Positions 39,651 through 64,000 of a DNA stretch of 64,000 nucleotides are shown in pieces. Both the position numbers and the translations under genes were made by a program. The notes under the pieces were generated by a model, which saw only the letters and a list, made by a program, of their open reading frames with translations, made no database searches and was not told the origin of the DNA. Positions within the stretch are counted from its first letter, which is position 1. Each line of letters opens with the position of its first letter. The DNA lies in the IMG/VR virus record IMGVR_UViG_3300036766_002289, positions 248,001-312,000 of that record, one strand, 5' to 3'.

Positions 39651-39682
39651 GATTGTTTTTGAATAACCTGTGGGATTAGCAA

Positions 39683-46983: not shown

Positions 46984-46989
46984 GCAGTT

Positions 46990-47009: not shown

Positions 47010-47034
47010 CTTGTCTAGAAATACTGAAATCAGA

Positions 47035-47062
47035 TTTACAAAACGGAAAGCTAGGCTAGAAT
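47035..47062 (+). promoter_or_regulatory. possible sigma70-type promoter abutting a motif copy
   Basis: TTTACA-16 nt-TAGAAT. Confidence 0.45.
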
Positions 47063-47125
47063 AAGCTTAGTTGTACCTTGAAAATTGCTGCCACGCACAC
47101 TACCATATAACAACGGGGGTGTGAC

Positions 47126-47743
47126 ATGGCAACTAAAGAATGTCTTGGTTGTGGGCCGAAAGAAGAAAATGAATTTGCGGCTGACAAATCGCGTGCAGAT
47201 GGCAAATGTCCATACTGTAAAGCGTGCAGGGCAAAACAAGAAAAAGAAAGACGGAAGGAGCGCGCCGCACTACCTACGCGGATTTGTTATCGGTGTGGGT
47301 TGGAGAAATTAAAGACAGAATTTTCTCCTAAAGAACGGCGTTATAGTAGGTCATTGCTTTGTTTGGACTGCCAGCAATTGGCGGGTGATAAAGCTTATCC
47401 TTTACATTTAGCGGCGTGCAAACGGACTTACGATAAAAGAAAAACAAAGATAAGTCAGCAGAAAAAAGACAAACGAATCGAGTTTAAGTTAGAGTTAATT
47501 CAGTTGGGCGGCGGTAAATGTTTGGATTGCGGGCTAGAATCAAATGAAGAGAATCCGCCAGCTTGTTTTGATTTCCACCATAAAGACCCTAAAGAAAAGA
47601 AATTTTCTGTTGGCAGGGCATTAGGGCACCATGCAAACAAGGATTTGAGTCTCGAAGAAATCAAGAAATGCGATCTTGTGTGTGCGACGTGCCACCGTAG
47701 AAGGCATGTAAACCTTAGTTGTACTAAGGTGGATGAACAATAA
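47126..47743 (+). CDS. HNH homing endonuclease-like protein
   Basis: Zinc-finger repeats; FDFHHKDP...EIKKCDLVCATCHR. Confidence 0.85.
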   Translation: MATKECLGCGPKEENEFAADKSRADGKCPYCKACRAKQEKERRKERAALPTRICYRCGLEKLKTEFSPKERRYSRSLLCLDCQQLAGDKAYPLHLAACKRTYDKRKTKISQQKKDKRIEFKLELIQLGGGKCLDCGLESNEENPPACFDFHHKDPKEKKFSVGRALGHHANKDLSLEEIKKCDLVCATCHRRRHVNLSCTKVDEQ

Positions 47744-47765
47744 CACTTTTTTCAAGGAGTTAGAC

Positions 47766-48755: not shown

Positions 48756-48818
48756 ATAATTTCCAAATATATAACATAATGGGTTGATTTATTTAGCCCA
48801 TTATGTTATATATAGTTT

Positions 48819-49529
48819 ATGGAACATTATTACGTTGAAAGCAAGAAGTGCCCACGTTGCGGCGAAACAAAAGGTAGAGATGAATTTCATAAAGATTCAT
48901 CCAGAAAAGATGGCTTACAAGCCATTTGCGCTGAATGTTCAAGAAAGAAACGACGGGAACAGAGTCGGAAAAACGCTGCACAAATAGAATACCCTTACAT
49001 TGAGTTTAGGGTATGTTCCACTTGTCAAGAAAAAAAGCATCGGTCGGAGTTCGGTAAAGACCGTTACGACAAATATGGTATACGTTGCATTTGCCTTAGT
49101 TGTACAAGAATAAGGAACAGGAAAAACTATGTAAAATATGATCGCCCTGGAGAAGAAGACTCTAGGTCACGCCTATACAAGGCGACTGTCAACGGTAGGC
49201 TTGTGAGCTTGTTAGGTAACGCTAAACGGCGGGCAAAGCTAAAGGGTTTAGATTATGATTTAGACCTACAATGGCTTCTAAATCTGTATCAGATACAAAA
49301 CGGTTCTTGTGTATTGACGGGGTTGCCGTTTTCTTTTGAATTTAATAAGGAATTCAAAAGACAGTTTATGCCGTTTTCGCCTTCACTGGACCGTATTGAC
49401 TCAAGTAAAGGTTACACAAAAGAAAACACGCGATTAGTATGCACGGCAATAAACATTGCTATGAACCATTACGGGGAGAAGACATTTGCGGAAGTGGCGA
49501 CGGCATATTTACAGCGGGTTAAACGGTGA
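48819..49529 (+). CDS. HNH-like homing endonuclease
   Basis: CxxC repeats; CVLTG...SLDRIDSSKGYTKEN..LVC..IN. Confidence 0.8.
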   Translation: MEHYYVESKKCPRCGETKGRDEFHKDSSRKDGLQAICAECSRKKRREQSRKNAAQIEYPYIEFRVCSTCQEKKHRSEFGKDRYDKYGIRCICLSCTRIRNRKNYVKYDRPGEEDSRSRLYKATVNGRLVSLLGNAKRRAKLKGLDYDLDLQWLLNLYQIQNGSCVLTGLPFSFEFNKEFKRQFMPFSPSLDRIDSSKGYTKENTRLVCTAINIAMNHYGEKTFAEVATAYLQRVKR

Positions 49530-50655
49530 TGGAATCTTTTCCCTATCCCCTTTTTTTGTACCTTATAACTTATATGTTAGTTGTACATTGAATTGTGATA
49601 AAGGAAAAGATTTCAAGGGGACAAAATGAAATACAAACTACGATTTCGTGGGACTGACCACATCCTTAATTGGATGGGTCATGAAGTAGCTTTCTCTGAG
49701 TCGGTGGCGGACATGCTGATATGGGATTCGGGTGGGGAGTTGGAGATTGTGTGGCCGCACGATTATCAGATTTAGCTTAGTTGTACCAAATCAAGGTAGA
49801 ATTCCTTACAAAGGAGATGTGATGCAGCTTCCTTCATTCAGCAATTACGGTGGTTATGCGTCGGATAACTATGGGGCGCATACACTTAGGTTCAATCTGG
49901 GGGCGATTTCGGTTTGGTATAGTTATCAGACTGTGGTTGCGTTCAGGGCGGGCCAGAGTGGGGAGTTGCGGGTATTGGACTATAAGGATTCGCAGACTAC
50001 CCGCAAGCATTTGAACAAGATTGATGGCGGTGCGGTGGCATGTCGTCTGAGTAAGGATGAGTTTCAGACGTTGTGGGACAAGGAAGTGAAACCTTACCTT
50101 AAAGCTTAGTTGTACCAAAATTCCCATGAATACATTAGCATGGTGTTTGTTGTTTTTGAATCCGCCCGACCGAACAACTGAGTTTGTCGGTTTAATTACT
50201 GACAAGAATGGGCAACAGGTCCACATTGAACTTGAAGTGAATCAGGTTGCGGTGGGCTATGACATTGTGCAGAATATCATAGTCAAGGTGGACAGGGAAG
50301 ACACTAGCGATTTTCGGGTGCAGTGGGGCCAATATGAATTGTGTACTGACTGCTTCATGGAATACGATGGTTCAGGTTTTGGTTGGGAGCGGCAAGATGA
50401 GTGGGTTGAACTAATCCATGACGGCGAAGTAATTTTCAGAATGTATGTAGCTCACTGGAGATAAAATGATTACTGAGAAGGACATTGCGGATCAGTGCGA
50501 GTTAATTCAGGATGATTTGGCTTGCATTCTGGATGGGGTAGATAATGAAACTTTGAACGCGGTTTGTCAGGTGATCGTGGACAGGCTGGCAATTTTGAAG
50601 GGCAAGATAGCTTAGTTGTACCAATCCCATTGTGATTTAACATAAAGGGGAAAAC

Positions 50656-51390
50656 ATGGCAAAGAAGAGTGACCGTCCGACGTTTGGGGTGCCCGATGAC
50701 ATTCTGCCGTCGTTCAAGCGGTATGTGGTGGCTAAGCAGATTTTCGAGATTGCACAATCCCGAATGGAAGCGGAGAATGGGGCAATCAAGGCCAAGATGA
50801 TTGATAGTTTCACGGATAGTCTGGTGCGTATCAAGCGCCGTCCTGCTAATCCACGTTTGACGTTGGCGGATGCTGGCAAGCCCGACATTGAGGGCCTGTT
50901 TCAGGTGCAGGAAAAGTTTTCTCCGCAAGCTGTGGAGGGTGATGGGCCAGTAGCCGAGCGGTTGAAGACTGCCTTTGTTTCCGCTGGTGTTTCGGCGGAT
51001 ACGGCGGATAAGATCGTGGCGAATGAGGTGGTTTGTGAAGACAAGACTACCTTAAAGCCTTTCAGTGAAATGATTAACGGTGCGCCTATTGAGCAAGAGT
51101 TGGCGGGCCGTTTGATGAAGCTTTTGCTTGATAGCTTCACGGATGATGAGCGGAAGTTGATGATTCAACCCGCGTCGAAGATTGAAGTTAAGGAAGGATT
51201 CTTTGAGCGGTTGGGCATTTACGTGAAGGATAAGGCCGAGGCGATTGGGGCAATTCGTGTGATGAAGCCTGTTCACTTCATGTCGCATATGAAGTTAGGG
51301 CTGAGTGATACACCGCAAGGGCGGTTGAATCGGCTCTATGAGTATAGTAAGGAAATGATTACTGGAGAGGTGCCCCCTTCCAAGGGCTAG
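50656..51390 (+). CDS. hypothetical protein (244 aa)
   Basis: AAGGGG RBS after a motif copy; strong terminator follows. Confidence 0.8.
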   Translation: MAKKSDRPTFGVPDDILPSFKRYVVAKQIFEIAQSRMEAENGAIKAKMIDSFTDSLVRIKRRPANPRLTLADAGKPDIEGLFQVQEKFSPQAVEGDGPVAERLKTAFVSAGVSADTADKIVANEVVCEDKTTLKPFSEMINGAPIEQELAGRLMKLLLDSFTDDERKLMIQPASKIEVKEGFFERLGIYVKDKAEAIGAIRVMKPVHFMSHMKLGLSDTPQGRLNRLYEYSKEMITGEVPPSKG

Positions 51391-51408
51391 GGCCAATCGG
51401 TCTTAGTC

Positions 51409-51440
51409 AACCCTAGTGCTTTCTGCACTAGGGTTTTTTT
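51409..51440 (+). terminator. intrinsic terminator
   Basis: AACCCTAGTGC/GCACTAGGGTT followed by a T-tract. Confidence 0.85.
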
Positions 51441-52359
51441 ATTGTTATAAATTTATAGCTTAGTTGTACTAAAAACCATATGAAACACATTACTGAAGAT
51501 TGTGAAGTTACTGTGGTTGATGGCGAAATTAGTGTGGATTATCGCCATGAGCGGGAAGTGACCATTACTGATAGTAATGGGATTCAACGGTTGCCCGCGT
51601 CGAGTGTTATTCCAGGGCTATCCCGCAATTGGTGGACTGCCAATTGGTCAGGGAGCCAGTGGAACTTGGACCTTGACTGTGGTTGTCAGAGGTTCAATGG
51701 TGTTACAACGACACGTCGCATCAATGAAGCGTTAAAGGTGGCGGGTTTGGACGCTGCTAAGGTTAAGGCAGTGGTGAGTGCAGCTAAGAAAAGGACGCAT
51801 TTTTCGGTAGGTAGGAAAGCTTAGTTGTACCAAATTGAACATGCCGCATTCGACTTCTGGCGAGGTCAGTGGTCCTTCACACCACTTAGACGGGATCGAA
51901 ACCCGTATGCGGTACTAAGGAGTAAACCTATGCCAGTTGAAGCTGTTGAAGGGGTTGATGGGAATTGGACCCTATATGAAAAGGGTGGCTTGCGAGCAAC
52001 GGCACGGGAATTCAAATCGAAGGAATTGGCCTTAGCTTGGGCTGTGAAAAAGGGCTGGAAGATAACTTAGTTGTACCAATTGAAAGGAATGAAGATGCTT
52101 TTCAAAAAGGTTACTGAGGGTTACGTTGAACAGACGTTCAATGATGCTGGGGAGTGTATTGCCCAGCGATTTGTGGCGGGTGAAGTGGAGTACGAGACGG
52201 AAGACGGTGATCCTATCAACGTGATGGATATGCCATTTGGCGGGAGGGAATACTTCCCCTTCGATATGAAGCAGCCTTCCGATGAGTGTTATAAGGAAGG
52301 CTAACTTAGCTTAGTTGTACCAAATCAATTGTGATTTCCTTTACTCAGGAGAATGGACA

Positions 52360-52860
52360 ATGCGGAATTCTTCTTCGTTCGCTGATTCGCTGGTTGAACT
52401 CATTGGCGGGCAGGTTCAGGAGGCCATCAACGATATGGACCTCAGTGACCAGATTGAGAAGGCAATCAGCAATTCCAACGAAATCGAGAAGCAGGTCGAG
52501 AAGCAGGTCGAGAGTGCGATGGATGACCTCGACATTGACGACAAGGTGAAAGATTCGGTGGCGGATTACGACATGAGCGAAGCCATCGAAAGCGTAATCA
52601 AGGACAATTACGATTTCCCCGAAATCTGCAAGGAAGCAATGGATGAGTTGCTGGGACAGCGTGTCAAGGATGAGTTGGAAGAAATCTACAAGTCAGCGGG
52701 TTTCATCGACGTGGTTGATGCGATTGTGCAGCATCGCCTTCATTGGATTGCCGCTGCAAAGCGTGCCAAGTTGGTGGATTATGTCAAGTTTGGCCCGCTG
52801 GTGCGATTTGTGAAGGGCAAGTATGCTGCTCTGGTGCAGTGGGTTGTCAAGAGTCGCTAA
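52360..52860 (+). CDS. acidic helical-repeat hypothetical protein
   Basis: AGGAG RBS; D/E-rich quasi-repeats. Confidence 0.7.
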   Translation: MRNSSSFADSLVELIGGQVQEAINDMDLSDQIEKAISNSNEIEKQVEKQVESAMDDLDIDDKVKDSVADYDMSEAIESVIKDNYDFPEICKEAMDELLGQRVKDELEEIYKSAGFIDVVDAIVQHRLHWIAAAKRAKLVDYVKFGPLVRFVKGKYAALVQWVVKSR

Positions 52861-53153
52861 TTCTTATAAGGGGAATCGCCCATCCCCTTATAACCTGGAT
52901 AGCTTAGTTGTACCAAACATGGAGATGAACATGGAAAGCAAGACACTTTCGCTGGAAGAAGTGGTTGAACGAATTGCTGAGTCACTTCGCCATTCAGAAG
53001 GCGACTTAGTTGCGGAAGTTTACAACGAGGTGATTGGAGGGAATCTGACCTATATGGGTGATTCCTACTTTAATGGGGATGGATAGCTTAGTTGTACCAA
53101 AGTGTGAGTAAGAAACAAGTTTTTCTCTTCTCTTTTTTGAAAGGGTTTTCGCA

Positions 53154-53465
53154 ATGGTCAAGAACGAACAGGTTCACGTCTGCGGTTCCGAGACTTCCAA
53201 GGGCTTCAAGGTGCTGCCGCTTCAGGTTCGGCATCGCAAGGTCAAGGAAGTCAAGGTTGTGAAGGCAAAGGGCAAGGTGGGTCGGCCCCGTGTCTACAAC
53301 GGCACCCATCGTCGCATCGTCGCGGCGGCTCTGAAGAATCACGGCCTTACCAAGGGTCTGGAGTTCCTCGCCAAGGAACGCAAGCTCAAGGTGTCCATGA
53401 CTCTGGCGCTCGCCGTCGCCAAGGAAAACGGGATTGAGTTCAAGCGTGGTCGGCCCGCCGCGTAA
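53154..53465 (+). CDS. highly basic putative nucleic-acid-binding protein ending -PAA
   Basis: K/R-rich; GRPR and RGRP AT-hook-like motifs; GC-rich codon bias. Confidence 0.65.
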   Translation: MVKNEQVHVCGSETSKGFKVLPLQVRHRKVKEVKVVKAKGKVGRPRVYNGTHRRIVAAALKNHGLTKGLEFLAKERKLKVSMTLALAVAKENGIEFKRGRPAA

Positions 53466-53633
53466 AGGAATGGGGGAATCGCCCATCCCCCTTCCCTGGA
53501 GTTAGACTCGGCCCTTCTTGGCTTGTGCCATTAAACGGGAGGCCCGTGGTGGGGCGGAAAAATTTACGGTAGTCTAACTTAGCTTAGTTGTACCAATTAG
53601 ATTGTGATTTCTTTTCTTTATGGAGGGCCAAAC

Positions 53634-53876
53634 ATGGCTCAGTCCGAATTGACCGAGGGTTTCGAGGTGTTTGAACTGCCGACGTATCAGACTTCGGCCA
53701 AAGAGTTTGCGGAGAAGGAAGGCGTTGACTACGCTGTGGCGCAGGGCTTCATCAAGCTGCTTGTGAAGCGTGGCGTGGCCGTTCAGCTTGCTTCCCGCAA
53801 GATTGAAGGGCAGAAGGGCAAGCCGACGAACATTTACGAGTTGCCCACCAATGTCTCTCTGAAGTTGGCTGCGTAG
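53634..53876 (+). CDS. putative winged-helix DNA-binding protein ending -LAA
   Basis: GGAGG RBS; ...L.KRG...GKPTNIY wing-like motif. Confidence 0.55.
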   Translation: MAQSELTEGFEVFELPTYQTSAKEFAEKEGVDYAVAQGFIKLLVKRGVAVQLASRKIEGQKGKPTNIYELPTNVSLKLAA

Positions 53877-53966
53877 TCGGGCATGGTGGTCTGGTGGCAG
53901 GGAGCCATCAGCGTAAGGTAGGCATACACTCCTACGCCACCTTAGCCTAGTTGTACCAGTCACTTT

Positions 53967-54006
53967 GGCTGAGTGGTGGAATGGCAGACACAAACCTTAG
54001 AAAATT
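53967..54006 (+). pseudogene. 5' half of a tRNA-Leu-like gene
   Basis: GGCTGAG-TG-GTG-GAATGGCAGA-CAC D arm nearly identical to that of the downstream tRNA-Leu; no 3' half; starts at motif+10. Confidence 0.65.
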
Positions 54007-54030
54007 TCATATCCTTTACTCTAATAGGAT

Positions 54031-54465
54031 ATGAAAACTTGCCCTATATGTTCTAAGGTGTTTAACTGGACTAAGAATGACGTATGTTCTTCTTGTCGTG
54101 TAGCTTGGTTACGGTATAAACAGCGCTCTAAAGCATACGAAATTCTTGGTAACGAGTGTGTTAAGTGCGGGAACAATGACCAAGACGTATTAACGTGCCA
54201 TCATCGCAAACCAAAAGAAAAATCGTTCATGCTTTGCTCTGCATGGGGTAGTATCGCATGGGAATTGATTGTAGACGAACTGAAAAAGTGCGAACTACTT
54301 TGTGCCAATTGCCATTTGAAATTCCATGCCAACGAGAATCAGAAAAGATTTAAGTTGGTTGAGAATTACTATCGGCCTCATGGTGGAATGGCATACACAG
54401 CAGACTTAAAATCTGCCGCCTATAACGGGCTTGTGGGTTCGAGTCCCACTGAGGCTATTCCTTAG
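54031..54465 (+). CDS. HNH endonuclease (ORF reads through tRNA-Leu)
   Basis: CVKCG...LTCHHRKP...ELKKCELLCANCH. Confidence 0.85.
   Translation: MKTCPICSKVFNWTKNDVCSSCRVAWLRYKQRSKAYEILGNECVKCGNNDQDVLTCHHRKPKEKSFMLCSAWGSIAWELIVDELKKCELLCANCHLKFHANENQKRFKLVENYYRPHGGMAYTADLKSAAYNGLVGSSPTEAIP
54374..54457 (+). tRNA. trnL: tRNA-Leu (anticodon TAA), CCA not encoded
   Basis: Acceptor GGCCTCA/TGAGGCT; D arm GTG/CAC; anticodon arm GCAGA-CTTAAAA-TCTGC; long variable arm; T arm GTGGG-TTCGAGT-CCCAC; discriminator A. Confidence 0.92.
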
Positions 54466-54510
54466 TTGTACCAAAAAGAGCATCAAACCTTTCGCCAGTA
54501 GGAGAGTAGA

Positions 54511-55143
54511 ATGCTTGTGACTGATTGCGAATCGAAACAGATGAAGCACGTTCTTGTACGCTGGTTTCGTCACCTTTTCGGGAAAACTTCTTGGAATGAG
54601 ATTTTTCCTAATCATGATGAGGGATGCGTCACAACGCAAAATAAAGGACGTGACAAATACCATCTCTATGAAAAATGGTTGAAGCGAGTTACGGCTTTTT
54701 TCGTTTCTTCTGATGCAACCTATGAACAAGCGGAGAGTTATTTCATCAAAAAACTACCATCTGAGTGGTGGTATGGTTGTCGGTCGGAATTGGTTGCTAT
54801 CTTGAGCGTGAGTCACAATGCCGCGAAGTGGGTAGCTGCAAATAAAGAGTTGGTTGCCAAGGAAGAGAAAACGTATTTTGATTGTCCCCATTGCGGCGGT
54901 TGTCACGGTTACAAGATTCCCGCAGACACCGATGAAGGCGAAATTACGGTGAAGTGTAAGCAAGAAAATGGCCAATTATTCAAGGTGCAATATGAAAATG
55001 CCAATGACCTTGGATTGACGCCAAACAAGGCAGATATGCCCACGATCATTAAAATCAAGAATTCAAATCGTGCTAGTCAGATTAAGACTGCCTTAGAGCA
55101 TTTGGGATTGGGATTGGGATTGGCACTAACGCCAGCGGCTTAA
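54511..55143 (+). CDS. hypothetical protein with zinc ribbon, ending -PAA
   Basis: AGGAG RBS; CPHC motif. Confidence 0.7.
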   Translation: MLVTDCESKQMKHVLVRWFRHLFGKTSWNEIFPNHDEGCVTTQNKGRDKYHLYEKWLKRVTAFFVSSDATYEQAESYFIKKLPSEWWYGCRSELVAILSVSHNAAKWVAANKELVAKEEKTYFDCPHCGGCHGYKIPADTDEGEITVKCKQENGQLFKVQYENANDLGLTPNKADMPTIIKIKNSNRASQIKTALEHLGLGLGLALTPAA

Positions 55144-55998
55144 CTTAGTTGTACCAAAGGGGGCAATGATGTACCGCGTAGTAACCAGAAACGCATTTGG
55201 TCATGAATTTTCTGTGATGAAAGAAGGAACAAGGGCCGAGTGCAAGCGGTTCATTCTTGGACGGTGGGGACATTGGCCCCCGTTTGCTGTCATTACGCAA
55301 CGGACTGAAAACTTTGAACGGTGTTTCTAACGGAGGAATCCCATGTTTGTGTTGAATGGTTTTTGTCGAAAAGAAGGCGATATGGAGCAGAATTTTAGTT
55401 CAGGCGAGACTGAACTGGCGCTTCATGTGGCCAAAATCTGGCAGAAGTTAGGCTGGCAACCGCGTCTCAAGCATTATGACGGCAGCGGTGTTCATTTCGT
55501 TAATTTCAATCCTCCGCTCCGTAAGGCAGCTTGATGCCAAGGGTTCGCCCACCCTGGTTTTACCTTAGTTGTACCAATCCCTTTAGGAGGCTGTTCATGA
55601 AGACTTGGAAATTTTATGGGTGGGGTGGGGGAAATGTCACTTGTCAAGGTGACACTGTTGTTGATGCACTAAAAGCAAGTGGTGGCTTATTTGAATTTGT
55701 GCGATATGAAGAAGTTGGCAAGGAGCCACAAACAACCGACGATGTTGATTTCTTGCTATATATTGCTGAGCGATTTTCTCGCCAGCTTAGTGGACAAGAC
55801 CAGCGTGAATTTGTGCGGATTTACGATAAATACGCGCCTAATTCAAAGCGAACTATTCTGAAAGAATTGAACAAAGTTGTTATTCACGCGGCATGGGATG
55901 CAAGGAACAACGCCGCCTAATCAGGGTTCTCGCCCACCCTGGTTTTACCTTAGTTGTACCAATTCAAGCAGATTACTCTTCTCTTTCTGGAGTTAGTC

Positions 55999-56508
55999 AT
56001 GCTGACTAAGGACTTCTTGACCGCTGGCAAGGCCATCTTCACCCTCGAAATCCCCCATGACTTCGCCAACAGGAACAACACCAAACCCCATTACACTTGG
56101 AAAGTGTCCAAACCCAAAAACCCTTCCTCATTTCTTTTTGTTTCTCTTCTCACTGGTCCCGATAACACCAACGACTATAAGTATTTGGGTCTTCTCTTCC
56201 CCCGTAATGGCATTGTAAATCTCACGGCCAAAAGCAATTTCGACGCTAAGTCATGGCCTGTCTTGCTCTTGCATCGTATTTGTGCCAACCTTTGGGGCAC
56301 GAACAAGATTGAGGCTAGTGGCTTCAAGCTGCACCATGAGGGTTATTGCTGCAAGTGTGGTCGGCTCTTGACGGTGCCAAGTTCCATTGAAAGTGGAATT
56401 GGTCCAGAATGCGGCAAGAAGGCTGTTTTCTATGGTGCCCCTGTTGTGACGGCAATGGATATTGCCAGCAATGGTGGTATCTATGAAGATGTATATGGGG
56501 GCGATTAG
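55999..56508 (+). CDS. DUF6011 domain protein
   Basis: HEGYCCKCGRLLTVPSSIESGIGPEC. Confidence 0.8.
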   Translation: MLTKDFLTAGKAIFTLEIPHDFANRNNTKPHYTWKVSKPKNPSSFLFVSLLTGPDNTNDYKYLGLLFPRNGIVNLTAKSNFDAKSWPVLLLHRICANLWGTNKIEASGFKLHHEGYCCKCGRLLTVPSSIESGIGPECGKKAVFYGAPVVTAMDIASNGGIYEDVYGGD

Positions 56509-57101
56509 CCCTTATAATAACATACCTTAGTTGTACATTATAAGAAAAGGAGAAACATATGACCTGGCGTGACGTGCTGCGTGGTTTACAGAATATGGGC
56601 AATAGCAAGCTGGATAGTGAAGCATTGCTTTATCTTCCAGCCGCGTTCTACAAGGACAAGGGCGAAATCGTTGCCTTCTCAAGGTTTACGACGATTGACG
56701 GTGACGTAGCTGAGGAGCATGACTGTACTGAGGGTGATCCTATTCTTTTGCGGTATTAGGGATTGCCTAGTTGTACCGAATGTGCTATACTCAAAAGGGG
56801 ATTGTGATGAAAGCGTTTGTATATGAATTCAGGGATGGACAGGCAAAGTGTGGTACGGGCCGTGTTACGCCGAATTATAAGAATTTGGCTAACATGAAGC
56901 GCTATTTCATCCAGAATCTTCCTGCTGGTTGTTACCAAATTCTTGCTTTTTTTGATTGGGACAATCGGTATAAGGATGCTGACATAACCGAAGTGGTTAC
57001 TGTGTATGGTTATCCGCCCGAAGTGACACGGATTTCCGTTCATAAGGGCAAATTGCTTTTGGGCAACGGGTGGATGATACCTTAGTTGTACGGAGAATCA
57101 T

Positions 57102-57521
57102 ATGACTATTCTACTCTTGATGCAAGGTGCTTCTGGTTCGGGTAAGTCCACCAAGGCCGAGGAATTGGCTGTGGAGCTTGATGCCGTCATTTACTCCACC
57201 GACGATATTTTCGCTGAAAGTGGCACGTACATTTTCAATCCGAAGTTGTTGGGTGTGAACCACAAGAAGAACTTGGACCGCACCATTGAGGCATTGAAGG
57301 CGGGCAAGAACGTCATTGTGGACAATACCAATACTCAGCGGTGGGAATGCAAGGGCTACGTTGAAGCGGCTCTGGAGTTAGGGGTAGAGGTTCGCTTCCA
57401 TCGTTGTGTTGGCAATTACCAGAACATTCATGGCGTGCCGAGCTACAAGGTTCAGCAAATGCGTGACCGTCTTGAGGATTTGACGGTTGAAAGCGTCATG
57501 GCGAGCAAGAAGCCTTTTTAG
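57102..57521 (+). CDS. P-loop polynucleotide-kinase-like protein (AAA_33)
   Basis: GASGSGKST, STDD, VIVDNTN, HGVP; ATG at motif+10. Confidence 0.85.
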   Translation: MTILLLMQGASGSGKSTKAEELAVELDAVIYSTDDIFAESGTYIFNPKLLGVNHKKNLDRTIEALKAGKNVIVDNTNTQRWECKGYVEAALELGVEVRFHRCVGNYQNIHGVPSYKVQQMRDRLEDLTVESVMASKKPF

Positions 57522-58848
57522 CTTAGTTGTACCAATTAGGGTATGATTACCTCTAATAGGAGAACGGCGATGAAGATTATCTGGACGGATGCGACGGAGG
57601 CCCAATTGCTCAAAGACACGCCGAAGTTGCTGGAGATTCATGAAAGGGCTTTGAAGTCGGACCCCACATGGGCATTCTTCGGGGGCACAATCACTATCGG
57701 TGAGCATAGCTATCAGATAGCTTAGTTGTACCAATTAGGTTGTAATTCCTTTAACTGGAGAAAGCCATGAAGACTTGCGATTTGAAGTTGGGCGACATTG
57801 TTCACTACAAGGGCAACACTGGCTTCTACATGGACATGACTGTGGTGAGCATTTTCGATGATGAAGTCGTGGTGTGGCGTCCTTATATTTGGATGACACA
57901 AGATGGTCCAGAGTTGAAGACGGAAAAAATTGTCTTCAGCGTAGAATACTCCAAGATGGAGTGGGAAGTCAAGAGTCGCCGCGCCGATTTGAATGCCAAC
58001 CGCGATTGGTACAATTGCGGACATGAGGTACCGAAAAAGGCGGAAATCAGTTGGTGTGGCATAGCCTAGTTGTACCAAATTAGATAACTCTTACTGGAGT
58101 CCAAAATGGACACATTTGAATCAGATGAAGAAGTTGGGCACGAAGAAGAAGTCAAAGAGGCTACGCACAAGGGCGTAATTTTGGCTGAGGATGATTTTGA
58201 GCTTGACCAGCTTGTGGTGGTGCATAGTCTCAAGGGCACGCTTGATACGGCCCCAATTATGGGGCAACCGCTCAAGTTCAAGGCGATTTGTCTGCCCTTC
58301 ATTATTGCCACAATTGTCCTTGAAAATCGGCCAATCACGCTGGACGCACGGTATCTACACTTCATGAAAATCAGTGAAGAGTTTGTGCGGGCGCAAATGT
58401 CCTTGCCGAACCAGCAGCAACAGCAGAAGAAGGGACCGCAAGCATAGCTTAGTTGTACCAACCAAGACGTAACTTAACTCAGTGGAGAGTAGAGATGCGT
58501 TACTTTCTGAAGTTGTCAACGAAGGATGGCTGGTACGAAGAGGTGGACGAATACACCTACAAGAATGCGCCCTACGCTATGGACGAAGGGGGAAATGATC
58601 CCCGTTATTGTGTGGGTGGTATCACCACTGATGGCGTCACAGTGGACGCTGATTTGCGTGGGGTTCCGCTCCGTGACATAGCTATTTTCGCAAGGGCATT
58701 GCAAGCCTTGGAACCAGCAAAGGTTGATGGCGGCTTCATTCGTCCAATGCCCGCGATCATCTTCAAAAAGGGCCGTTCAAACTTCATGCGAACAGCAGAT
58801 GGCAAGGTGTGGAAATCGGTGGCTTAGCCTAGTTGTACCAAAACATTT

Positions 58849-58986
58849 GCCCCTGTAGTGTAAACGGTAGCATACCTAATCACGGTTCTAAGGTAACGGG
58901 AATTCACGTTATGCTTATCATCTGGGAAGTACAACTAGATGCTGCGTGGTTGGTGGAGCAGAAAATCGAAAACTGCCAGGGGCACC
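58849..58986 (+). ncRNA. tRNA-like RNA with anticodon loop replaced by a two-hairpin domain
   Basis: Acceptor GCCCCTG/CAGGGGC + ACC; D arm GTGT-AAACGGTA-GCAT; extended stem 58875-84/58945-53; T-like arm GCAG/CTGC; starts at motif+10. Confidence 0.7.
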
Positions 58987-59098
58987 CTAATCTAATTGAA
59001 ATTTATGACAGAAATAACCTTATACTCGGTCTGATAGTTGGGCGGTAAGCTGAAAAATGCTTATCGCCTCCCATAAAAAGAAACAATGATTTATATTG

Positions 59099-59128
59099 AA
59101 CCGCTATACAGCGTTGTATAGCGGTTTT
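59099..59128 (+). terminator. hairpin/terminator
   Basis: AACCGCTATACA/TGTATAGCGGTT followed by TT. Confidence 0.65.
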
Positions 59129-59510
59129 ATCTATATCTTAGTTGTACAAGGATTGTTATGATTGAAATACTTGACCTTAGCTGTGTGCCAGTTGATGAAA
59201 AGTGCGAGCAGTTGGGAGTCAATTATGACCCCACCAAGGCAATCAAGGAATGCCGTGCCTTCATCCGCCAATTGCGTCGGCAATTCGGTGAGGAACCATT
59301 CGGGGCGCAGTTGAAGATTACGTCCAATCCACATGACTTCGGCACCTATCATGAGGTGGCCGTCAAGTTCCATGACCAATTTGAGGAAGCAGTTGAATAC
59401 GCTTTCAAGTTGGAATCGGAATTGCCCGAAAAGTGGGACGATGGTGCGCTGCGAGAGTTGGGCCTATTTGACCGATTAGTTTCCTAAACCTTAGTTGTAC
59501 CAAAATCCCC

Positions 59511-60608
59511 ATGAACGTACAAGACTATCTTCGCTCTGGCAAGACTCTGGAAAACTTGACTTCCGAGCTTGCTATCAGCGTAACCAAGCATGACTCTCTG
59601 CCGCTGGTCATTCTCAATTATGACCAGATTGATTCGCCTAAGACCAATCCCATCGTGCGGGAATGTCGCGGTCTGGTTCTCCAGTCTGAGAACTATTCGC
59701 TGGTGGCCCGTGCTTTCGGTCGCTTCTTCAATTGGGGCGAAGTGGCTGACGAAATGCCCTTGTTCGACTGGAACACTTGCATTGCCGACGAAAAGGCCGA
59801 TGGTTCCCTTGTCCTCATCTATAACTTTGAAGGCCAGTGGCTTGCCAATACCCGTGGCTCTTTCGCTGGTTGGCCTATCTTCAATGATGAATACAAGGCA
59901 AAGTATTTCGGCGTTGACCCGTCAATGCGCTGGTCCGATGCCTTCCTAAAGGCGCTGAACGTCAACAGCCTTGATGAGTTAAACCTTGACCCGTCCATTA
60001 CTTACGTCTGTGAGTTCTGTTCGCTGTGGAACAAGGTTGTACGGGAGTATCCTACTCCGTGCATGTATCTGTTGACGCGGTTTGCTGGTGAGCAAGAGAT
60101 TGGCCCTTTGACTCATCCCGCATTCCGAACGTTGCAGCGATTTCCCTTGACGAATGTTCAGGAAGTGCAGAACTTTTGCACGGATCATCCCGAAGCAACC
60201 TTTGAGGGGGTGGTTGTGAAGGACTCCAGCTATCGCCGCTGGAAGCTGAAGAATCCGCGATACGTGTCTCTGCACCACATGAAGGGCAATGGGGATGGCA
60301 TGTGGCGTCCTAAGTATATGCTGCCCTATATCCTCAAGAATGAAGGCGATGAACTGTTGACCTACTTCCCCGAAATCACCGAACTCTATAATGAGTATAG
60401 GGATAAGGTGAATGCAGAGTATGTCATGCTGGAGGCGCTCTGGCTGAAGAACAAGGACATTGTGAACCAAAAGGAATTCGCTTTGTCCATTGTGGGGAAG
60501 ACTCCGTTCACTGGTGTTTTGTTCAATCTCCGTAGGGATGGTGGGGATTTGAAGCGGTCGTGGTTGAACCATGAGGATGGAATCTTAAAGGTGCTGTTCA
60601 AAGCTTAG
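59511..60608 (+). CDS. T4 Rnl1-like RNA ligase
   Basis: RECRGLVL, FFNWGE, EKADGSL (motif I Lys), TRGS, EGVVV, KLKN; ATG at motif+10. Confidence 0.9.
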   Translation: MNVQDYLRSGKTLENLTSELAISVTKHDSLPLVILNYDQIDSPKTNPIVRECRGLVLQSENYSLVARAFGRFFNWGEVADEMPLFDWNTCIADEKADGSLVLIYNFEGQWLANTRGSFAGWPIFNDEYKAKYFGVDPSMRWSDAFLKALNVNSLDELNLDPSITYVCEFCSLWNKVVREYPTPCMYLLTRFAGEQEIGPLTHPAFRTLQRFPLTNVQEVQNFCTDHPEATFEGVVVKDSSYRRWKLKNPRYVSLHHMKGNGDGMWRPKYMLPYILKNEGDELLTYFPEITELYNEYRDKVNAEYVMLEALWLKNKDIVNQKEFALSIVGKTPFTGVLFNLRRDGGDLKRSWLNHEDGILKVLFKA

Positions 60609-60615
60609 TTGTACC

Positions 60616-60744
60616 AATTTGGTCTGATGACTCCCACTGATTACCTATGGGGCAGTGCGGTGGAGTTAGGGTGAGCAAGCCCTAGCGAAAAAGGTATAAA
60701 GAGCAACCGTCATTCCGTGGATTTGCTGCACGGATTCTTTTTTC
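60616..60744 (+). ncRNA. candidate small structured RNA with its own terminator
   Basis: Lies between two motif copies with only a 15-codon ORF; stems GACTCC/GGAGTT, CACTG/CAGTG, TAGGG/CCCTA; terminator TCCGTG/CACGGA + T-tract. Confidence 0.55.
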
Positions 60745-61407
60745 CTTAGTTGTACCGAGTTCATCATGGCTGAACTTTTGGTTTGCATCGACAAAGACTT
60801 GATTGAAATTAACGTCACGCATGAACGTGATGGTGGTTTCCCTAATCCAGGGTGGGAATCAGCGGGATGGTTCCCTTCTATTCATGACGCTTTGACCGAA
60901 GGCAAGCTGTGGCTGGACATGGGCAAGGACATGGGCCTCAAACGTGGGGCTAGAAGTCGTCCTCGTTACTGGTTGCAAGCGGCCTAAACCTTAGTTGTAC
61001 CAATTCAATCATGAAACAATTCTACATTGAAGTGATGATGCCGCCCTTCCCGATCAAAGGGAAGAAGTTCAAAGTCTGGTCAACCTATCCTGGCGATGCG
61101 TTGTCGCCTGATTTGACCATGTTGTTCAGCGTATGGGCGTTGGACAAGGAAGATGCAATTTCCAAGACGCTTTCGGGTGAAGCACATACGTTGCTTTCCC
61201 CCAATGCGAAGAAGCTTCAACTAGCATAAGGGGATACGATGATGGGTTGGCAGCGAAAACAAGATGAAAAGCGGAAGCTGAACGGTCAGAAGGACTGGAC
61301 ACGCGAACAGAAGGAGCAAATGAGGTTGTTTCTGAAGCAGTATCCACAAGGAGGGGAGCATGACCGAGAACGGCGAAAAGCTGGATGACCTTTGGATTGA
61401 TTTGGGC

Positions 61408-61439
61408 GGGGAAGGCTAAAAGGGGCCTTCCCCTTTTTT
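61408..61439 (+). terminator. intrinsic terminator
   Basis: GGGGAAGGC/GCCTTCCCC followed by T7. Confidence 0.85.
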
Positions 61440-62089
61440 GTTCCTATAATTAGCTTAGTTGTACTAATTAGGCTGTGATTCCTAAAACAGGAGCAGAACA
61501 TGAACGAACGACATGCGGGAATTCCGTGGATACCTGAAGCAATGCACGGATAAGCAGGTGCAAGGCGTCTACGATAAGGAAAACGAAGCTGACCGCGACA
61601 ATTACGCAGAATTGGCGATTGCGGAAGCAGAACGTCGTGGCATTATGCTGGACCTTAAACCTTAGTTGTACCAATTAGGCTGTGATTTAACCCTTGCGGA
61701 GGATCGTCATGGGTAACATCGAAGCCTTGGAAATGGTCGCCGTTCTTGCCAATTCGGCCCGCGAACAACTCTTGAAGGGCGAAAAGCCCTGCATCAGCAA
61801 TCTCAACCGTATCATCCACCTTGCCGTGACCGTCGAACGGGAATTCGATGAACAATGGCAAGCGGAAGGAGAGAAGAATGAGAATTGCAGTTGATTACGT
61901 AGACGGGGACTATAGGGAATATAATAGCCTCGAAGCTGCCGTCGAATTCATCATGGACCATGAGGCCGAAGTAGAACGCATCTATGAGGTTGACGTGGGC
62001 CAAGCTAAAATCAAAGAATACGGGTGCGAATGGAGTTTGAAGCTGGTAGAATTATAGCTTAGTTGTACCAATTAGGTTGTAATTAACCC

Positions 62090-62181
62090 CAAACAGGAGC
62101 AAGGTCATGCGTTATTGGATTCGTCACGAAGACCTCAAACAGGAGCAAGGTCATGCGTTATTGGATTCGTCACGAAGACCT
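62090..62181 (+). repeat. perfect 46-bp tandem duplication of RBS plus first codons
   Basis: 62090-62135 is identical to 62136-62181; CAAA microhomology at the junctions. Confidence 0.9.
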
Positions 62182-62398
62182 CAAAACGGCAAATTATTGT
62201 GACAACTATGATTGCCCGCTTGCACGGGCCGTCAAGCGGAAACATCCCCTCGTCCATGTCCAAGTCAATTCCCGCTATGTTTTCATGAACGGCAAGGCTT
62301 ACCACATTGCCACGCCGTCCGCTGACAAGCTGCTGTCATGGTCATGCAAAGAAATCATTCTCGACAAGGGCTTCCATGTCCGTCTCAGTGCGGCCTAG
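62153..62398 (+). CDS. hypothetical protein ending -SAA (paralog of 62919-63215)
   Basis: Shares MRxWIRxxDLxTANY...DCxLARAxKRK...KGFHVRL. Confidence 0.75.
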   Translation: MRYWIRHEDLKTANYCDNYDCPLARAVKRKHPLVHVQVNSRYVFMNGKAYHIATPSADKLLSWSCKEIILDKGFHVRLSAA

Positions 62399-62918
62399 TT
62401 TCAGGGTTCGCCCAACCCTGGCTTTACCTTAGTTGTACCAATTAGGTTGTGATTTCTTACCCTTTACCTGGAGTCTTGACAATGGGCAATGCTTTCCGTC
62501 TGGCCAAGCTGCTGGTGATCGAGAATCCCAATCGTTCCGCCAAGTCCATCCGAGAGGAAATCGAGAAGATGACGGGCATCAACCTCGATGGCCGCGTGAT
62601 CGGCGGCGAGAAGCGCATCCTCATCTATCGCAAGGGCAAAGCGGCCTAAGCCAAGGGGTCGCCCACCCTGGCTTAACCTTAATGGAGAAATCCCATGAAT
62701 GAAGAACTCAAAATCAAGCTCCACGAAATGCTCGAATCGTATTCAAGTCAACTTGATACGATTTGGTATAACTCTGATTCGGGTTCGCACATGGATTGGT
62801 GCCGTAGGCAACAAGCTGAGATTGCCGAACTCATTGCCGAACTCGAAGCTGTTGACGCGATTTGCTGGTAGGCATAACTTAGTTGTACCAATTAGGTTGC
62901 CCAAAACAGGAGAATACA

Positions 62919-63215
62919 ATGCGTTTTTGGATTCGTCTGGCTGACCTCCGAACGGCGAACTACAGTAGCAATACGGACTGCTTTTTGGCCCGCGCCATCA
63001 AGCGTAAAATCCCAAAGGCTAAGGTTCTGGTCCATCCCGATTTTGTCGAGGTGGGTAAAACTCACTACGCGATTGTCGGCAATGGAGTGGACCGACTCAA
63101 AGAGGACCATGACACCAAGGAAAAAGGCTTCCACGTCCGACTCCGTAAAGTGAGTGGCTGGCTAGAGTGTAACCAAGCGAAAGCCGCAATTGACCACATC
63201 AGGACGTTCAATTAG
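62919..63215 (+). CDS. hypothetical protein (paralog of 62153-62398)
   Basis: AGGAG RBS; shared motifs as above. Confidence 0.75.
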   Translation: MRFWIRLADLRTANYSSNTDCFLARAIKRKIPKAKVLVHPDFVEVGKTHYAIVGNGVDRLKEDHDTKEKGFHVRLRKVSGWLECNQAKAAIDHIRTFN

Positions 63216-63264
63216 CTTAGTTGTACCAATTAGGTTGTGATTCAACCCAAACAGGAGAACGGCC

Positions 63265-63393
63265 ATGTTTGAAGTCATTCGCAACGGCAAGGTTCTGTTC
63301 CGCAATGCTTCCTATCAGCGTTGTCTCCAATTCAAGGCCCGCCACAAGCTCAATGCCATCATTCGGCCCATGCCCCAAATGCTCGCGGCCTAA
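63265..63393 (+). CDS. 42-aa basic protein ending -LAA (absent from the ORF track)
   Basis: AGGAG RBS; MFEVIRNGKVLFRNASYQRCLQFKARHKLNAIIRPMPQMLAA. Confidence 0.7.
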   Translation: MFEVIRNGKVLFRNASYQRCLQFKARHKLNAIIRPMPQMLAA

Positions 63394-63671
63394 GCCAAGG
63401 GGTCGCCCACCCCTGGTTCTATACCCTAGTTGTACCGAGGTTCACATGCTTATTCCCCGCGCCGTAGTGTTTGATTCAAAAGGCAAAGCTCTTTGTGCTG
63501 GCAATCCCTGCAATGGTTACTCTCATCGCACCGACTGCCGCCATACGACCATGCACCTACCATCGGAACATTTCGATTTTATCGACGTGAACGTGGAAGG
63601 CAAGACTGAGGCCGAAATCATGTATGAAATCACGGCGGAATACCACATCTAAGGGCCATTCAGGTCTGAGT

Positions 63672-63810
63672 TGAGAGTGGCTTAAAATAGGAGCAAACCT
63701 ATCCGTGGCCGCATTAACTTCGGTTAGTGCCCGCCCAAGAAAGTAACGGGAGCCAACGGGAAACACCCTCCAAAAGTGGATTACCAATGACTCATCAATA
63801 ACCGCTCTTA
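63672..63810 (+). ncRNA. candidate multi-hairpin structured RNA
   Basis: Closing stem TGAGAGTGG/CCGCTCTTA; ATAGG/CCTAT; GCATTAAC-TTCG-GTTAGTGC; GGG/CCC; TCCA/TGGA. Confidence 0.6.
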
Positions 63811-64000
63811 CCTTAGTTGTACCAATTAGGTTGTGATTCCACCCCAACAGGAGCAAAGTCATGCTGGTTCTCGACAATCCCAAAGACATTGCCGCCTTCC
63901 GTAAGTTGGCACTACGTAGTGCTTTAGGGCTGGAAATGAAGGGCTTCAAACGGCATGGACCGTCTTGCTTCTCCATCATCAAGGCCGAATTCGGGCTGAA

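What the first reader, a model, noticed from the sequence alone, without database searches (positions are those of the whole stretch)
49576..64000. One-gene-per-motif cassette architecture with a density gradient and homogenised leaders
Seen: no copies in the first 8.6 kb, about one per 2-3 kb up to 35 kb, and about one per 350 bp after 49.5 kb. Right-end copies share a longer leader, CTTAGTTGTACCAATTAGGYTGTRATT...CAAACAGGAG. Two nearby units carry paralogs (62153, 62919), and some units hold only RNA. Known: repeated promoter/stem-loop cassettes mediate modular shuffling in T4-type phages (PeSL elements). Inference: recombination between repeats adds, deletes and duplicates single-gene modules, with the youngest or earliest-expressed at the right.
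Basis: partly seen in the sequence, partly recalled or inferred. Interest (0 to 1): 0.65.

Follow-up and report, generated by a model that had tools for sequence, protein, structure and literature searches.

The report
Promoter-per-gene cassette array in huge phage
A 390-kb uncultured phage puts the same 20-base signal, most likely its own kind of promoter, in front of nearly every small gene in a fast-changing region, and its relatives do the same with slightly different versions of the signal, which marks out swappable single-gene units.

Summary
The core TTAGTTGTAC occurs 84 times exactly on the + strand of the 390-kb genome and 2 times on the - strand. Density rises to about one copy per 380 bp from window 49.5 kb to genome 316.6 kb, which is 4.6 kb past the window end.

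The conserved block is about 20 nt (ATASC-TTAGTTGTAC-CAA). It usually holds the stop codon of the upstream gene. It sits exactly 10 nt before an ATG in 22 units, or before a G that opens an SD-bearing leader.

Five relatives have the same architecture, each with its own internally uniform variant around an invariant TGTAC. These are phage genomes or contigs of 160-595 kb plus one 2-kb contig.

My best reading is a clade-specific, non-sigma-70 promoter, often paired with an upstream GC-rich stem-loop. Transcription would start 11 nt after TAC, which makes about a quarter of the units leaderless mRNAs. No phage RNA polymerase was found; three sigma-like genes were.

Comparison with two relatives shows a conserved backbone order, single-cassette translocations and about 75% gene turnover. 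Homology ends at the motif. The PeSL analogy therefore holds for architecture and plasticity, but not for promoter type. Recombination at the motif itself is not shown. I rate this a new variant of a known kind.

The parts
49572..64000 (+). Dense cassette zone. It continues to genome 316,640, which is 4.6 kb beyond the window. There are 37 motif copies, with TTAG/CTAG starting at 49577, 49777, 50106, 50612, 51460, 51821, 52067, 52311, 52904, 53088, 53584, 53947, 54462, 55145, 55565, 55950, 56527, 56767, 57082, 57523, 57722, 58066, 58449, 58829, 59138, 59491, 60605, 60746, 60991, 61455, 61662, 62059, 62429, 62879, 63217, 63426 and 63813.
8696..49110 (+). Sparser part of the same array: 29 + strand copies, and units of one to several genes.
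59486..59513 (+). Example of the short class. It comprises the stop of the upstream gene (TAA 59485-59487), the motif, 10 nt, then the ATG of the RnlA-like RNA ligase gene. There is no SD, so a leaderless start is predicted.
59511..60608 (+). RnlA-like RNA ligase gene (365 aa). Its stop codon is the TAG inside the next motif. It is a backbone anchor conserved in G001 (74%) and LR756511 (55%).
57102..57521 (+). Polynucleotide-kinase-like P-loop gene (AAA_33). It belongs to the short class (ATG 10 nt after TAC) and is a backbone anchor.
63212..63267 (+). Example of the long class with the homogenised leader. It comprises the motif, then CAATTAGGTTGTGATT, then ACCC..AAACAGGAG, then the ATG at 63265.
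51816..51915 (+). RNA-only unit: the motif followed by tRNA-Glu(UUC), which starts 13 nt after TAC.
53942..54465 (+). Unit comprising the motif, a 5' tRNA-Leu fragment (from 53967, exactly 11 nt after TAC), an HNH endonuclease ORF (54031-54465) and the full tRNA-Leu(UAA) at 54374-54457.
58824..59137 (+). RNA-only unit: the motif and a tRNA-like RNA starting 11 nt after TAC. It contains a reverse-complement motif copy at 58929-58938.
60600..60745 (+). RNA-only unit: the motif, about 100 nt without an ORF, and a hairpin with a T-run. No Rfam match.
55538..55564 (+). Recurrent GC-rich stem-loop (AGGGTTCGCCCACCCTGG followed by TTTTA) directly upstream of a motif. Similar copies lie at 55924, 62401, 62652 and 63396.
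62153..62398 (+). Paralog A (81 aa).
62919..63215 (+). Paralog B (98 aa), 46% identical to A.
62086..62185 (+). 46-nt tandem duplication (2.2 copies) of the SD and first codons of paralog A. It is absent from the related strain in run X3.
47733..48755 (+). The most conserved cassette gene (340 aa): 87% identity to G001 and 62% to LR756511. It is an anchor used to find further relatives.

Best explanation
The repeat is a clade-specific promoter, often joined to an upstream terminator-like stem-loop. It heads almost every small gene, tRNA or small RNA in the accessory (hyperplastic) region of a huge phage with T4-type portal and terminase.

The conserved block ATASC-TTAG-TTGTAC-CAA would lie at about -25 to -8. 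Transcription would start 11 nt after TAC, at a purine preceded by a pyrimidine. In about a quarter of units that purine is the A of the start codon, giving leaderless mRNAs. In the others it is a G that opens a 25-30-nt leader with a GGAG ribosome site.

The 5' part of the block supplies the stop codon of the upstream gene. Stop, promoter and start therefore fit into about 30 nt.

The phage has no detectable RNA polymerase of its own but encodes three sigma-like proteins. The signal is therefore most likely read by host polymerase carrying a phage sigma; this step is inferred, not shown.

Every unit is bounded by the same short sequence. Units can therefore be gained, lost, replaced or moved without breaking expression, and comparison with relatives shows that this happens. 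Whether the motif itself is the crossover point is inferred only.
For: Strand and position:
- There are 84 exact copies on + and 2 on -. All lie upstream of + strand genes, tRNAs or ORF-free units.

Start point:
- The ATG sits exactly 10 nt after TAC in 22 units of G000 and 25 of G001, with few at neighbouring distances.
- The base before that ATG is C or T in 47 of 47 cases, against about 50% at SD-led ATGs genome-wide. The same holds in LR756511 (16/16), L192 (5/5) and L194 (8/8). All 3 copies in L151 have the ATG at this distance, each preceded by C or T on reading the printed sequences.
- Long-leader units have T then G at the same two positions, and both classes share R-T-R-A there.
- Two tRNA-like RNAs begin at position 11, and tRNAs begin at positions 11-16.
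- Eight of the 22 short-class units have no SD-like triplet at all.
- TA lies 12-13 nt before the ATG, which is the known signature of bacterial leaderless genes (PMC3160421).

Trans-acting reader:
- Each relative has its own uniform variant around the invariant TGTAC. G001 has TTAGCTGTACC (110+/3-). LR756511 has AAAGCTGTAC. L192 has TTGCRATTGTACCA and L194 has TTGAGGTTGTACTAA.
- Uniform within a genome and different between genomes is the pattern known from phage polymerase and sigma-specific promoters.

Not a sigma-70 promoter, and no phage polymerase:
- Sigma-70-like sites are not enriched: 13 found, 16.9 expected.
- No multisubunit RNAP was found (controls positive).
- Sigma-like ORFs of 275, 160 and 108 aa are present and conserved in both relatives.

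Terminator-promoter composites:
- A stable stem-loop lies upstream of 29/68, 35/74 and 33/55 dense-zone copies in the three genomes.

Plasticity.
Against: - There are no RNA data. No RNA run holds the sequence, so no transcription start is observed.
- In G000's homogenised leaders, the 7-8 nt just after TACC are complementary to the bases before the SD more than in cross-pairings (1 of 5000 permutations). If that is an RNA hairpin, the start must lie further upstream than I propose. The signal is weak in G001 (368/5000) and not evident in the other lineages.
- The motif's RAG(K) after TACC could serve as a weak SD at 6-nt spacing.
- The block does not match any known sigma consensus, and no reader protein is identified.
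- The T7-type RNAP search had a silent control, so a divergent single-subunit polymerase is not excluded.
Confidence: 0.65

Rival explanations
1. The motif is an RNA-level signal inside long polycistronic transcripts. It could be a cleavage or binding site for a phage or host ribonuclease or RNA-binding protein that separates cistrons, or a 5' element that stabilises them. Transcription would start elsewhere.
For: - Most units have no terminator before the next motif, so read-through is likely.
- Complementarity between the bases after TACC and the bases before the SD in G000 would need those bases to be transcribed.
- Lineage-specific uniform variants would also fit a co-evolving RNA-binding protein.
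Against: - The pyrimidine-purine pair at a fixed 10/11 nt, with ATG there in 47 units of two genomes, fits initiation by RNA polymerase rather than cleavage.
- There is no conserved secondary structure across lineages.
- No other promoter class is enriched in the zone that could drive the long transcripts.
- Units that follow strong stem-loop plus T-run terminators still carry the motif.
Confidence: 0.12
2. The motif is simply the strong early promoter for the unmodified host RNA polymerase of an unknown host whose primary-sigma consensus is unusual. No phage factor would be involved.
For: - The gene content is early-like by analogy with T4: RNA ligase, polynucleotide kinase, tRNAs and many small ORFans.
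- TA lies at -13/-12 and TG just before it, resembling an extended -10 element displaced by one base.
- T4-type phages use host polymerase.
Against: - Closely related phages found in similar sediment and freshwater samples differ uniformly at positions upstream of TGTAC. This is not expected if a conserved host sigma reads the site.
- There is no -35 element, and the 10 contiguous invariant bases are unlike host promoters.
- A separate TATAAT-like element precedes the sigma-2 gene.
Confidence: 0.12
3. The motif is primarily a recombination site, integron-like or a homing-endonuclease target. Its job would be to capture and move gene cassettes, and expression signals would be incidental.
For: - Homology between strains and relatives ends at the motif.
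- Single cassettes have moved.
- Three HNH endonuclease genes lie in the zone.
Against: - No tyrosine recombinase is present in the genome, with a positive control.
- The motif is not an imperfect inverted repeat like attC.
- The fixed 10-nt distance to ATG and the Y-R pair have no role in recombination.
- Copies also head conserved, immobile backbone genes.
Confidence: 0.05

Closest known systems
PeSL elements (promoter-early stem-loop) of T4-type phages (Arbiol et al. 2010, PMC2839356; Comeau et al. 2014, PMC4122927)
   Same: - Composite of stem-loop, promoter, SD and start codon in the intergenic spaces of hyperplastic regions of phages with T4-type core genes.
- Runs of single ORFs, each flanked by the element.
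- Insertions, deletions, replacements and displacements between related phages lie next to the elements.
- The sequence is lineage-specific.
   Different: - The promoter is not a sigma-70 (-35, N17, -10) or MotA-type promoter. It is one contiguous block of about 20 nt with TGTAC invariant.
- Far denser and more numerous: about 100 copies, one per 380 bp, against a few tens.
- The upstream stop codon is embedded in the element.
- A quarter of units have no SD, with the ATG at a fixed 10 nt.
- The stem-loop is present in only about 45-60% of copies.
- Mini-circles were not tested.
Phage-specific promoter sets read by a phage-encoded polymerase or sigma (T7/T3/SP6 promoters; SPO1 gp28 and gp34 promoters; phiKZ early promoters). 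Named from general knowledge.
   Same: A conserved contiguous block close to the start site, identical in many copies within a genome and differing at a few specificity positions between related phages. All copies are on the transcribed strand.
   Different: No phage RNA polymerase was detected. The number of copies per genome is much higher, and each serves one very small gene.
SPO1 host-takeover module (a cluster of small early genes with many promoters and terminators). Named from general knowledge.
   Same: A cluster of very short genes of mostly unknown function, each or nearly each with its own strong promoter, at one end of a transcription region.
   Different: SPO1 early promoters are host sigma-A type. 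The module holds about 24 genes, not more than 100, and cassette shuffling has not been described for it.
Integron gene-cassette arrays
   Same: An array of single promoter-distal ORFs separated by a repeated short site. Content varies between relatives.
   Different: No integrase. The repeat is not an attC-type inverted repeat. Each unit appears to carry its own promoter rather than relying on a single Pc promoter.

Membership tests
PeSL (T4-type promoter-early stem-loop cassette) | Host phage belongs to the T4-like myoviruses | tested here: met
   T4 gp20-type portal (E=6e-76) and T4-type large terminase domains. However, the nearest cultured phages have only about 29% TerL identity, so the phage is a distant member of the superfamily at best.
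PeSL (T4-type promoter-early stem-loop cassette) | Sigma-70-like early promoter (-35, about 17 nt, -10), or a Mot box plus -10 | tested here: not met
   The logo shows one contiguous block and no bipartite pattern. Sigma-70-like sites in 49-64 kb number 13, against 16.9 expected from shuffles.
PeSL (T4-type promoter-early stem-loop cassette) | Stem-loop just upstream of the promoter | tested here: met
   A stable hairpin (-9 kcal/mol or lower) lies in the 45 nt upstream of 29/68 (G000), 35/74 (G001) and 33/55 (LR756511) dense-zone copies. Many are a recurrent GGGTYCGCCCACCC type. So the feature is met in about half of the copies only.
PeSL (T4-type promoter-early stem-loop cassette) | SD and start codon at the 3' end of the element | tested here: inconclusive
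   39 of 101 copies have a GGAG-type SD 18-45 nt after TAC. 22 have the ATG at 10 nt without an independent SD.
PeSL (T4-type promoter-early stem-loop cassette) | Concentrated in hyperplastic regions and adjacent to indels, replacements or displacements between related phages | tested here: met
   Only 12-41% of ORFs in 230-320 kb have a homolog in G001, against 45-100% in most other bins. Single-cassette translocations were polarised with LR756511 as outgroup. Homology stops at the motif.
PeSL (T4-type promoter-early stem-loop cassette) | Excised mini-circles, or deletions by recombination between two elements | not testable with these tools
   Only assembled contigs were served. The joints seen in the source run coincide with the >=27-nt repeated leaders and are alignment ambiguities. 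One contig of run X3 joins 59440, plus 29 other letters, to 60992. This is consistent with loss of three cassettes between motifs 59491 and 60991, but it is a single contig.
Promoters of a phage-encoded RNA polymerase (T7-like or phiKZ-like) | Genome encodes the polymerase | tested here: not met
   PF00623 and PF00562 gave no match, with 14/14 controls positive. PF00940 gave no match, but its control was silent, so that search is inconclusive. The large ORFs without Pfam hits are tail-fibre or structural by PHROGs, or unassigned.
Integron cassette array | Tyrosine-recombinase integrase and attC-type sites | tested here: not met
   PF00589 is absent, with 14/14 controls positive. The motif is not an inverted repeat.
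Bacterial leaderless genes | -10-like TA signal about 12 nt upstream of the start codon, and no SD | tested here: met
   The TA of TGTAC lies at -13/-12 from the ATG in the 10-nt class. 8 of 22 units have no SD-like triplet. The criterion is taken from PMC3160421. The transcript 5' end itself was not observed.

The most novel reading that the evidence does not exclude
A whole clade of huge sediment and freshwater phages uses a self-contained junction of about 30 nt: the stop codon of the upstream gene, a private promoter, and a leaderless ATG 11 nt after TGTAC. This would be a plug-and-play socket for single genes. The upstream half of the socket would be a lineage-specific 'promoter code' that co-evolves with a phage-encoded sigma. 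Accessory genes could then be swapped freely within a lineage by short-homology recombination and expressed at once. That would make it an integron-like gene-capture system without an integrase.
Probability: 0.3. Interest if true: 0.75.

Novelty: new variant of a known kind. Interest (0 to 1): 0.6.

Why it matters
Huge phages carry hundreds of small genes of unknown function, and how those genes are expressed and exchanged is largely unknown. This region offers several things:
- A sequence rule (TGTAC, 10 nt, then Y-R) that predicts transcription units and gene starts, including leaderless ones, in at least five uncultured phage lineages.
- A natural series of promoter variants to pair with their reader protein.
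- A clear case where regulatory repeats delimit the units of gene turnover, extending the PeSL idea from 170-250-kb T4-type phages to 340-595-kb genomes with a different promoter class.

It also gives compact, portable expression signals that could be tested as orthogonal promoter and sigma pairs.

Tried and rejected
- Exact-pattern scans of IMG/VR. The 18-nt leader pattern found nothing. The 14-nt core gave about 100 single chance hits. The only locus with two hits (L063) is a coding tandem repeat. Relatives were found through proteins instead.
- LR756511 first looked motif-free when searched with the G000 core. De novo k-mer counting then showed its own variant.
- A repeated 13-mer in L153 is a coding repeat, not a regulatory motif.
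- Rfam gave nothing for the ORF-free units.
- RNA evidence: no RNA run holds the region.
- Joints in the source run X1 (for example 57565 to 62052) fall in the repeated long leaders and were rejected as alignment ambiguity, not taken as circles.
- A 5' RNA hairpin as a general feature is significant only in G000. It is not supported in G001 and not evident in the other lineages.
- Reading the block as -35 plus -10, as a MotA box plus -10, as the Bacteroidetes TAnnTTTG element, or as an ECF promoter: the spacings do not fit (reasoning). The strong GGAG sites also argue against a Bacteroidetes host.
- TAG recoding: making TAG sense gains no more open frame than the other stops.
- Terminal repeats or a genome terminus: none at the contig ends.
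- Literature searches for the motif, or for promoters of huge phages, found nothing relevant.
No alternative genetic code was used.

Full report
WHAT THE WINDOW IS

The window is bases 248,001-312,000 of a 390,039-bp IMG/VR virus record. The genome encodes a T4 gp20-type portal that contains an intein, and a T4-type large terminase. It carries about 48 tRNA genes and has about 38% G+C.

The nearest GenBank phage is the uncultured 595-kb genome LR756511.1, with 67% TerL identity. Cultured phages reach only about 29%. Public runs that hold the region are sediment and freshwater metagenomes.

Yes.
- TTAGTTGTAC with up to 1 mismatch occurs 69 times in the window, 66 of them on the + strand, against 3.5 expected. 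Genome-wide there are 84 exact copies on + and 2 on -.
It continues past the window end to genome 316,622, where the array stops abruptly.
- The longer shared leader has 9 matches in the window against 0 expected, and many more follow just beyond it.
- The two paralogs are 46% identical.
- A tRNA-Glu unit, a tRNA-like unit and an ORF-free unit exist.
- 'One gene per motif' holds for about four units in five.
- G+C rises from about 0.38 to 0.44-0.48 in the dense zone. The same happens in a relative.

ANATOMY

A logo over 101 copies shows a contiguous conserved block from 5 nt before TTAG to 2-4 nt after TAC: A-T-A-S-C-TTAGTTGTAC-C-A-A. A weaker Y-R-T-R lies exactly 10-13 nt after TAC.

The stop codon of the upstream ORF is most often the TAG inside TTAG or the TAG 4 nt before it. 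This is why TAG makes up 44% of stops in 283-317 kb, against 13-19% elsewhere.

Downstream there are two classes.
- Short class: in 22 units the ATG starts exactly 10 nt after TAC, with only a handful at 11-14 nt.
- Long class: in about 39 units a GGAG-type ribosome site and an ATG follow at 30-45 nt. In these the base 11 nt after TAC is usually G preceded by T.

A stable GC-rich stem-loop, often the recurrent GGGTYCGCCCACCC type followed by a short T-rich run, lies directly upstream of 29 of 68 dense-zone copies. Sigma-70-like promoter matches are not enriched in the zone: 13 found against 16.9 expected.

RELATIVES

The RnlA-like ligase and a conserved 340-aa protein were used as queries.
- G001, a 373-kb phage, has 110 + and 3 - copies of TTAGCTGTAC. 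That is one base different in every copy. It shows the same gradient, the same G+C rise and the same two classes, with 25 ATGs at 10 nt.
- LR756511.1 looked negative with the G000 core. K-mer counting then revealed AAAGCTGTAC. There are 55 copies on + in its first 19 kb, with their own homogenised leader, and 77 on - thinning out to about 300 kb.
- A 341-kb phage (L192) has TTGCRATTGTACCA.
- A 160-kb contig (L194) has TTGAGGTTGTACTAA.
- A 2-kb contig (L151) has TTAGTTGTAC preceded by TTC.

The invariant part in all of them is TGTAC, then 10 nt, then Y-R. The bases upstream of TGTAC are uniform within a genome and differ between genomes.

WHY A PROMOTER, AND WHERE IT STARTS

Four features point to a transcription signal read by a co-evolving trans-acting factor:
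- the strand bias;
- the position before genes, tRNAs and ORF-free units;
- the frequent pairing with an upstream terminator-like hairpin;
- the pattern of variants that are uniform within a genome and different between genomes.

The start point is inferred from several observations.
- There is a sharp peak of ATGs at one distance in every lineage.
- The base before those ATGs is a pyrimidine in 47 of 47 cases in G000 and G001, against about 50% at SD-led ATGs genome-wide. It is also a pyrimidine in all 29 cases tallied in LR756511, L192 and L194, and in the 3 L151 copies on reading the printed sequences.
- The same Y-R-T-R appears in long-leader units.
- Two tRNA-like RNAs begin at that very position.
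- Eight short-class units have no SD-like triplet.
- The RAG after TACC is conserved in long-leader units too, so it belongs to the motif rather than being an SD.
- In L151 the ligase gene has an extra ATG that restores the 10-nt distance.

A TA about 12 nt before the start codon is the accepted signature of bacterial leaderless genes (PMC3160421). I therefore place +1 at 11 nt after TAC and read the short class as leaderless mRNAs. This is inference. No RNA data exist for this phage.

WHO READS IT?

No multisubunit RNA polymerase is encoded (controls positive). A T7-type search was negative, but its control was silent.

Three sigma-like ORFs are present:
- 275 aa with regions 2 and 4;
- 160 aa, ECF-like, with regions 2 and 4;
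- 108 aa, similar to T4 gp55.

All three are conserved in G001 and LR756511. The 160-aa gene is preceded by a conserved TATAAT-like element in G000 and G001.

A second motif, TAAATAAT or TATATAAW, lies 3-6 nt before many ATGs outside the zone. It looks like a T4-late-type promoter, a natural partner for the gp55-like protein.

By exclusion, the cassette motif would be read by host polymerase carrying one of the other two sigmas. This step is the weakest in the chain.

DOES THE ARRAY SHUFFLE?

G000 and G001 are collinear and 65-85% identical in DNA outside the zone. Inside it there is almost no DNA homology. Only 12-41% of ORFs in 230-320 kb have a protein match, against 45-100% in most other bins.

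About 24 of 104 ORFs in the dense zone are shared. With LR756511 as outgroup, a backbone order is conserved: the 340-aa gene, a 244-aa gene, the kinase, the ligase and others. Single cassettes have moved. The unit at genome 294,603 lies left of the backbone only in G000. The 244-aa unit is displaced only in G001. Several small units near the right end are also out of order.

In all 15 orthologous pairs with a motif on both sides, the 40 nt upstream of the motif are at random identity (0.20-0.40). The motif is 0.67-0.94 identical, and the coding sequence, where the start coordinates align, about 0.6-0.7.

A strain about 90-95% identical in another sediment metagenome (run X3) has contigs whose homology begins 3, 3 and 8 nt before TTAG at motifs 58066, 59491 and 61662, with unrelated sequence upstream. 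At 61662 that upstream sequence is a tRNA 3' end. One X3 contig passes from 59440 to 60992 with 29 other letters between. This is consistent with absence of the three units between two motifs.

Cassette genes are almost all unrelated to each other. Even so, the right-end leaders are nearly identical within each genome and different between genomes. One ortholog keeps a related leader in G000 and LR756511 but carries the local leader type in G001 (sequences).

Together this shows cassette-wise turnover and concerted evolution of the junctions. It does not prove that crossovers happen inside the motif, because any viable rearrangement must end at a gene boundary, and every boundary is a motif. 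No tyrosine recombinase is encoded. Three HNH endonuclease genes in the zone may contribute.

COMPARISON WITH KNOWN SYSTEMS

The closest described system is the PeSL of T4-type phages (PMC4122927). A PeSL is a stem-loop plus early promoter plus SD and start, lying in hyperplastic regions next to indels, replacements and displacements.

Architecture, location and association with plasticity match. The defining sigma-70-type promoter does not match, and mini-circles could not be tested. Other differences are the density, the embedded stop codon and the fixed-distance leaderless starts.

In how it works, the motif resembles phage-specific promoter sets such as those of the T7 group or SPO1 (my own knowledge). 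No phage polymerase is present here.

I file it as a new variant of a known kind.

UNEXPLAINED

- The complementarity between the bases after TACC and those before the SD in G000 leaders. It conflicts with the proposed start site if it acts in RNA.
- The G+C rise in the dense zone.
- The opposite orientation of the dense block in LR756511.
- The identity of the reader protein.

Noticed in passing
genome-wide, e.g. G000 genome 23769, 32291, 98463, 144973, 324268, 353372 (outside the window); window 25570 (= genome 273570): A second promoter-like motif, TAAATAAT or TATATAAW, lies 3-6 nt before the ATG of many genes outside the cassette zone. It resembles the T4 late promoter TATAAATA and again implies very short or absent leaders.
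   Followed up: partly
G000 genome 170512-170586; G001 167507-167581: A tRNA with anticodon CUA (an amber suppressor; ARAGORN calls it tRNA-Pyl) is conserved in both phages. TAG is not recoded genome-wide. It is, however, the stop codon embedded in the motif and makes up 44% of stops in the dense zone, so suppression would extend many cassette proteins.
   Followed up: partly
window 62086-62185: A 46-nt tandem duplication (2.2 copies, 98% matches) of the SD and first codons of gene 62153. The period is not a multiple of 3, so the first ATG opens a short out-of-frame ORF. The related strain in run X3 lacks it.
   Followed up: yes
window 53967-54465: An HNH endonuclease ORF (54031-54465) sits between a 5' fragment of tRNA-Leu and the complete tRNA-Leu(UAA) at 54374-54457, and overlaps the latter. 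G001 has the tRNA without the HNH gene. It looks like a homing-endonuclease insertion with partial target duplication. Two further HNH paralogs lie at 47126-47743 and 48819-49529.
   Followed up: partly
window 58829-58990: The tRNA-like RNA after motif 58829 contains a reverse-complement copy of the motif (58929-58938). This forms a 10-bp inverted repeat with its own upstream motif. ARAGORN and Rfam do not call it a tRNA.
   Followed up: partly
G000 genome 372396-374927 (L016:8396-10927) and 126371-128659 on the - strand (L011:10371-12659): Inteins interrupt the T4-type portal protein and a C-methyltransferase. The latter also has a LAGLIDADG domain.
   Followed up: no
window 42000-64000 and G001 290-325 kb: G+C rises to 0.44-0.50 in the dense cassette zone, against 0.38-0.41 in the rest of both genomes. 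This suggests a different origin or different constraints for these genes.
   Followed up: partly
LR756511.1 0.7-19.2 kb (+) versus 19.4-300 kb (-): In the 595-kb relative, the dense homogenised block and the thinning-out gradient are on opposite strands and converge at about 19.3 kb. In G000 and G001 they are on the same strand. This implies an inversion of the dense block in one lineage.
   Followed up: no
whole record G000: IMG/VR labels the record 'provirus'. However, no tyrosine recombinase and no terminal repeats were found, and the content is phage-like throughout. The region 360-390 kb, which holds the terminase and portal, has almost no counterpart in the G001 contig.
   Followed up: partly
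LR756511.1 12371 and 12404: Two motif copies lie only 33 nt apart with no gene between them. This may be an emptied cassette slot.
   Followed up: no
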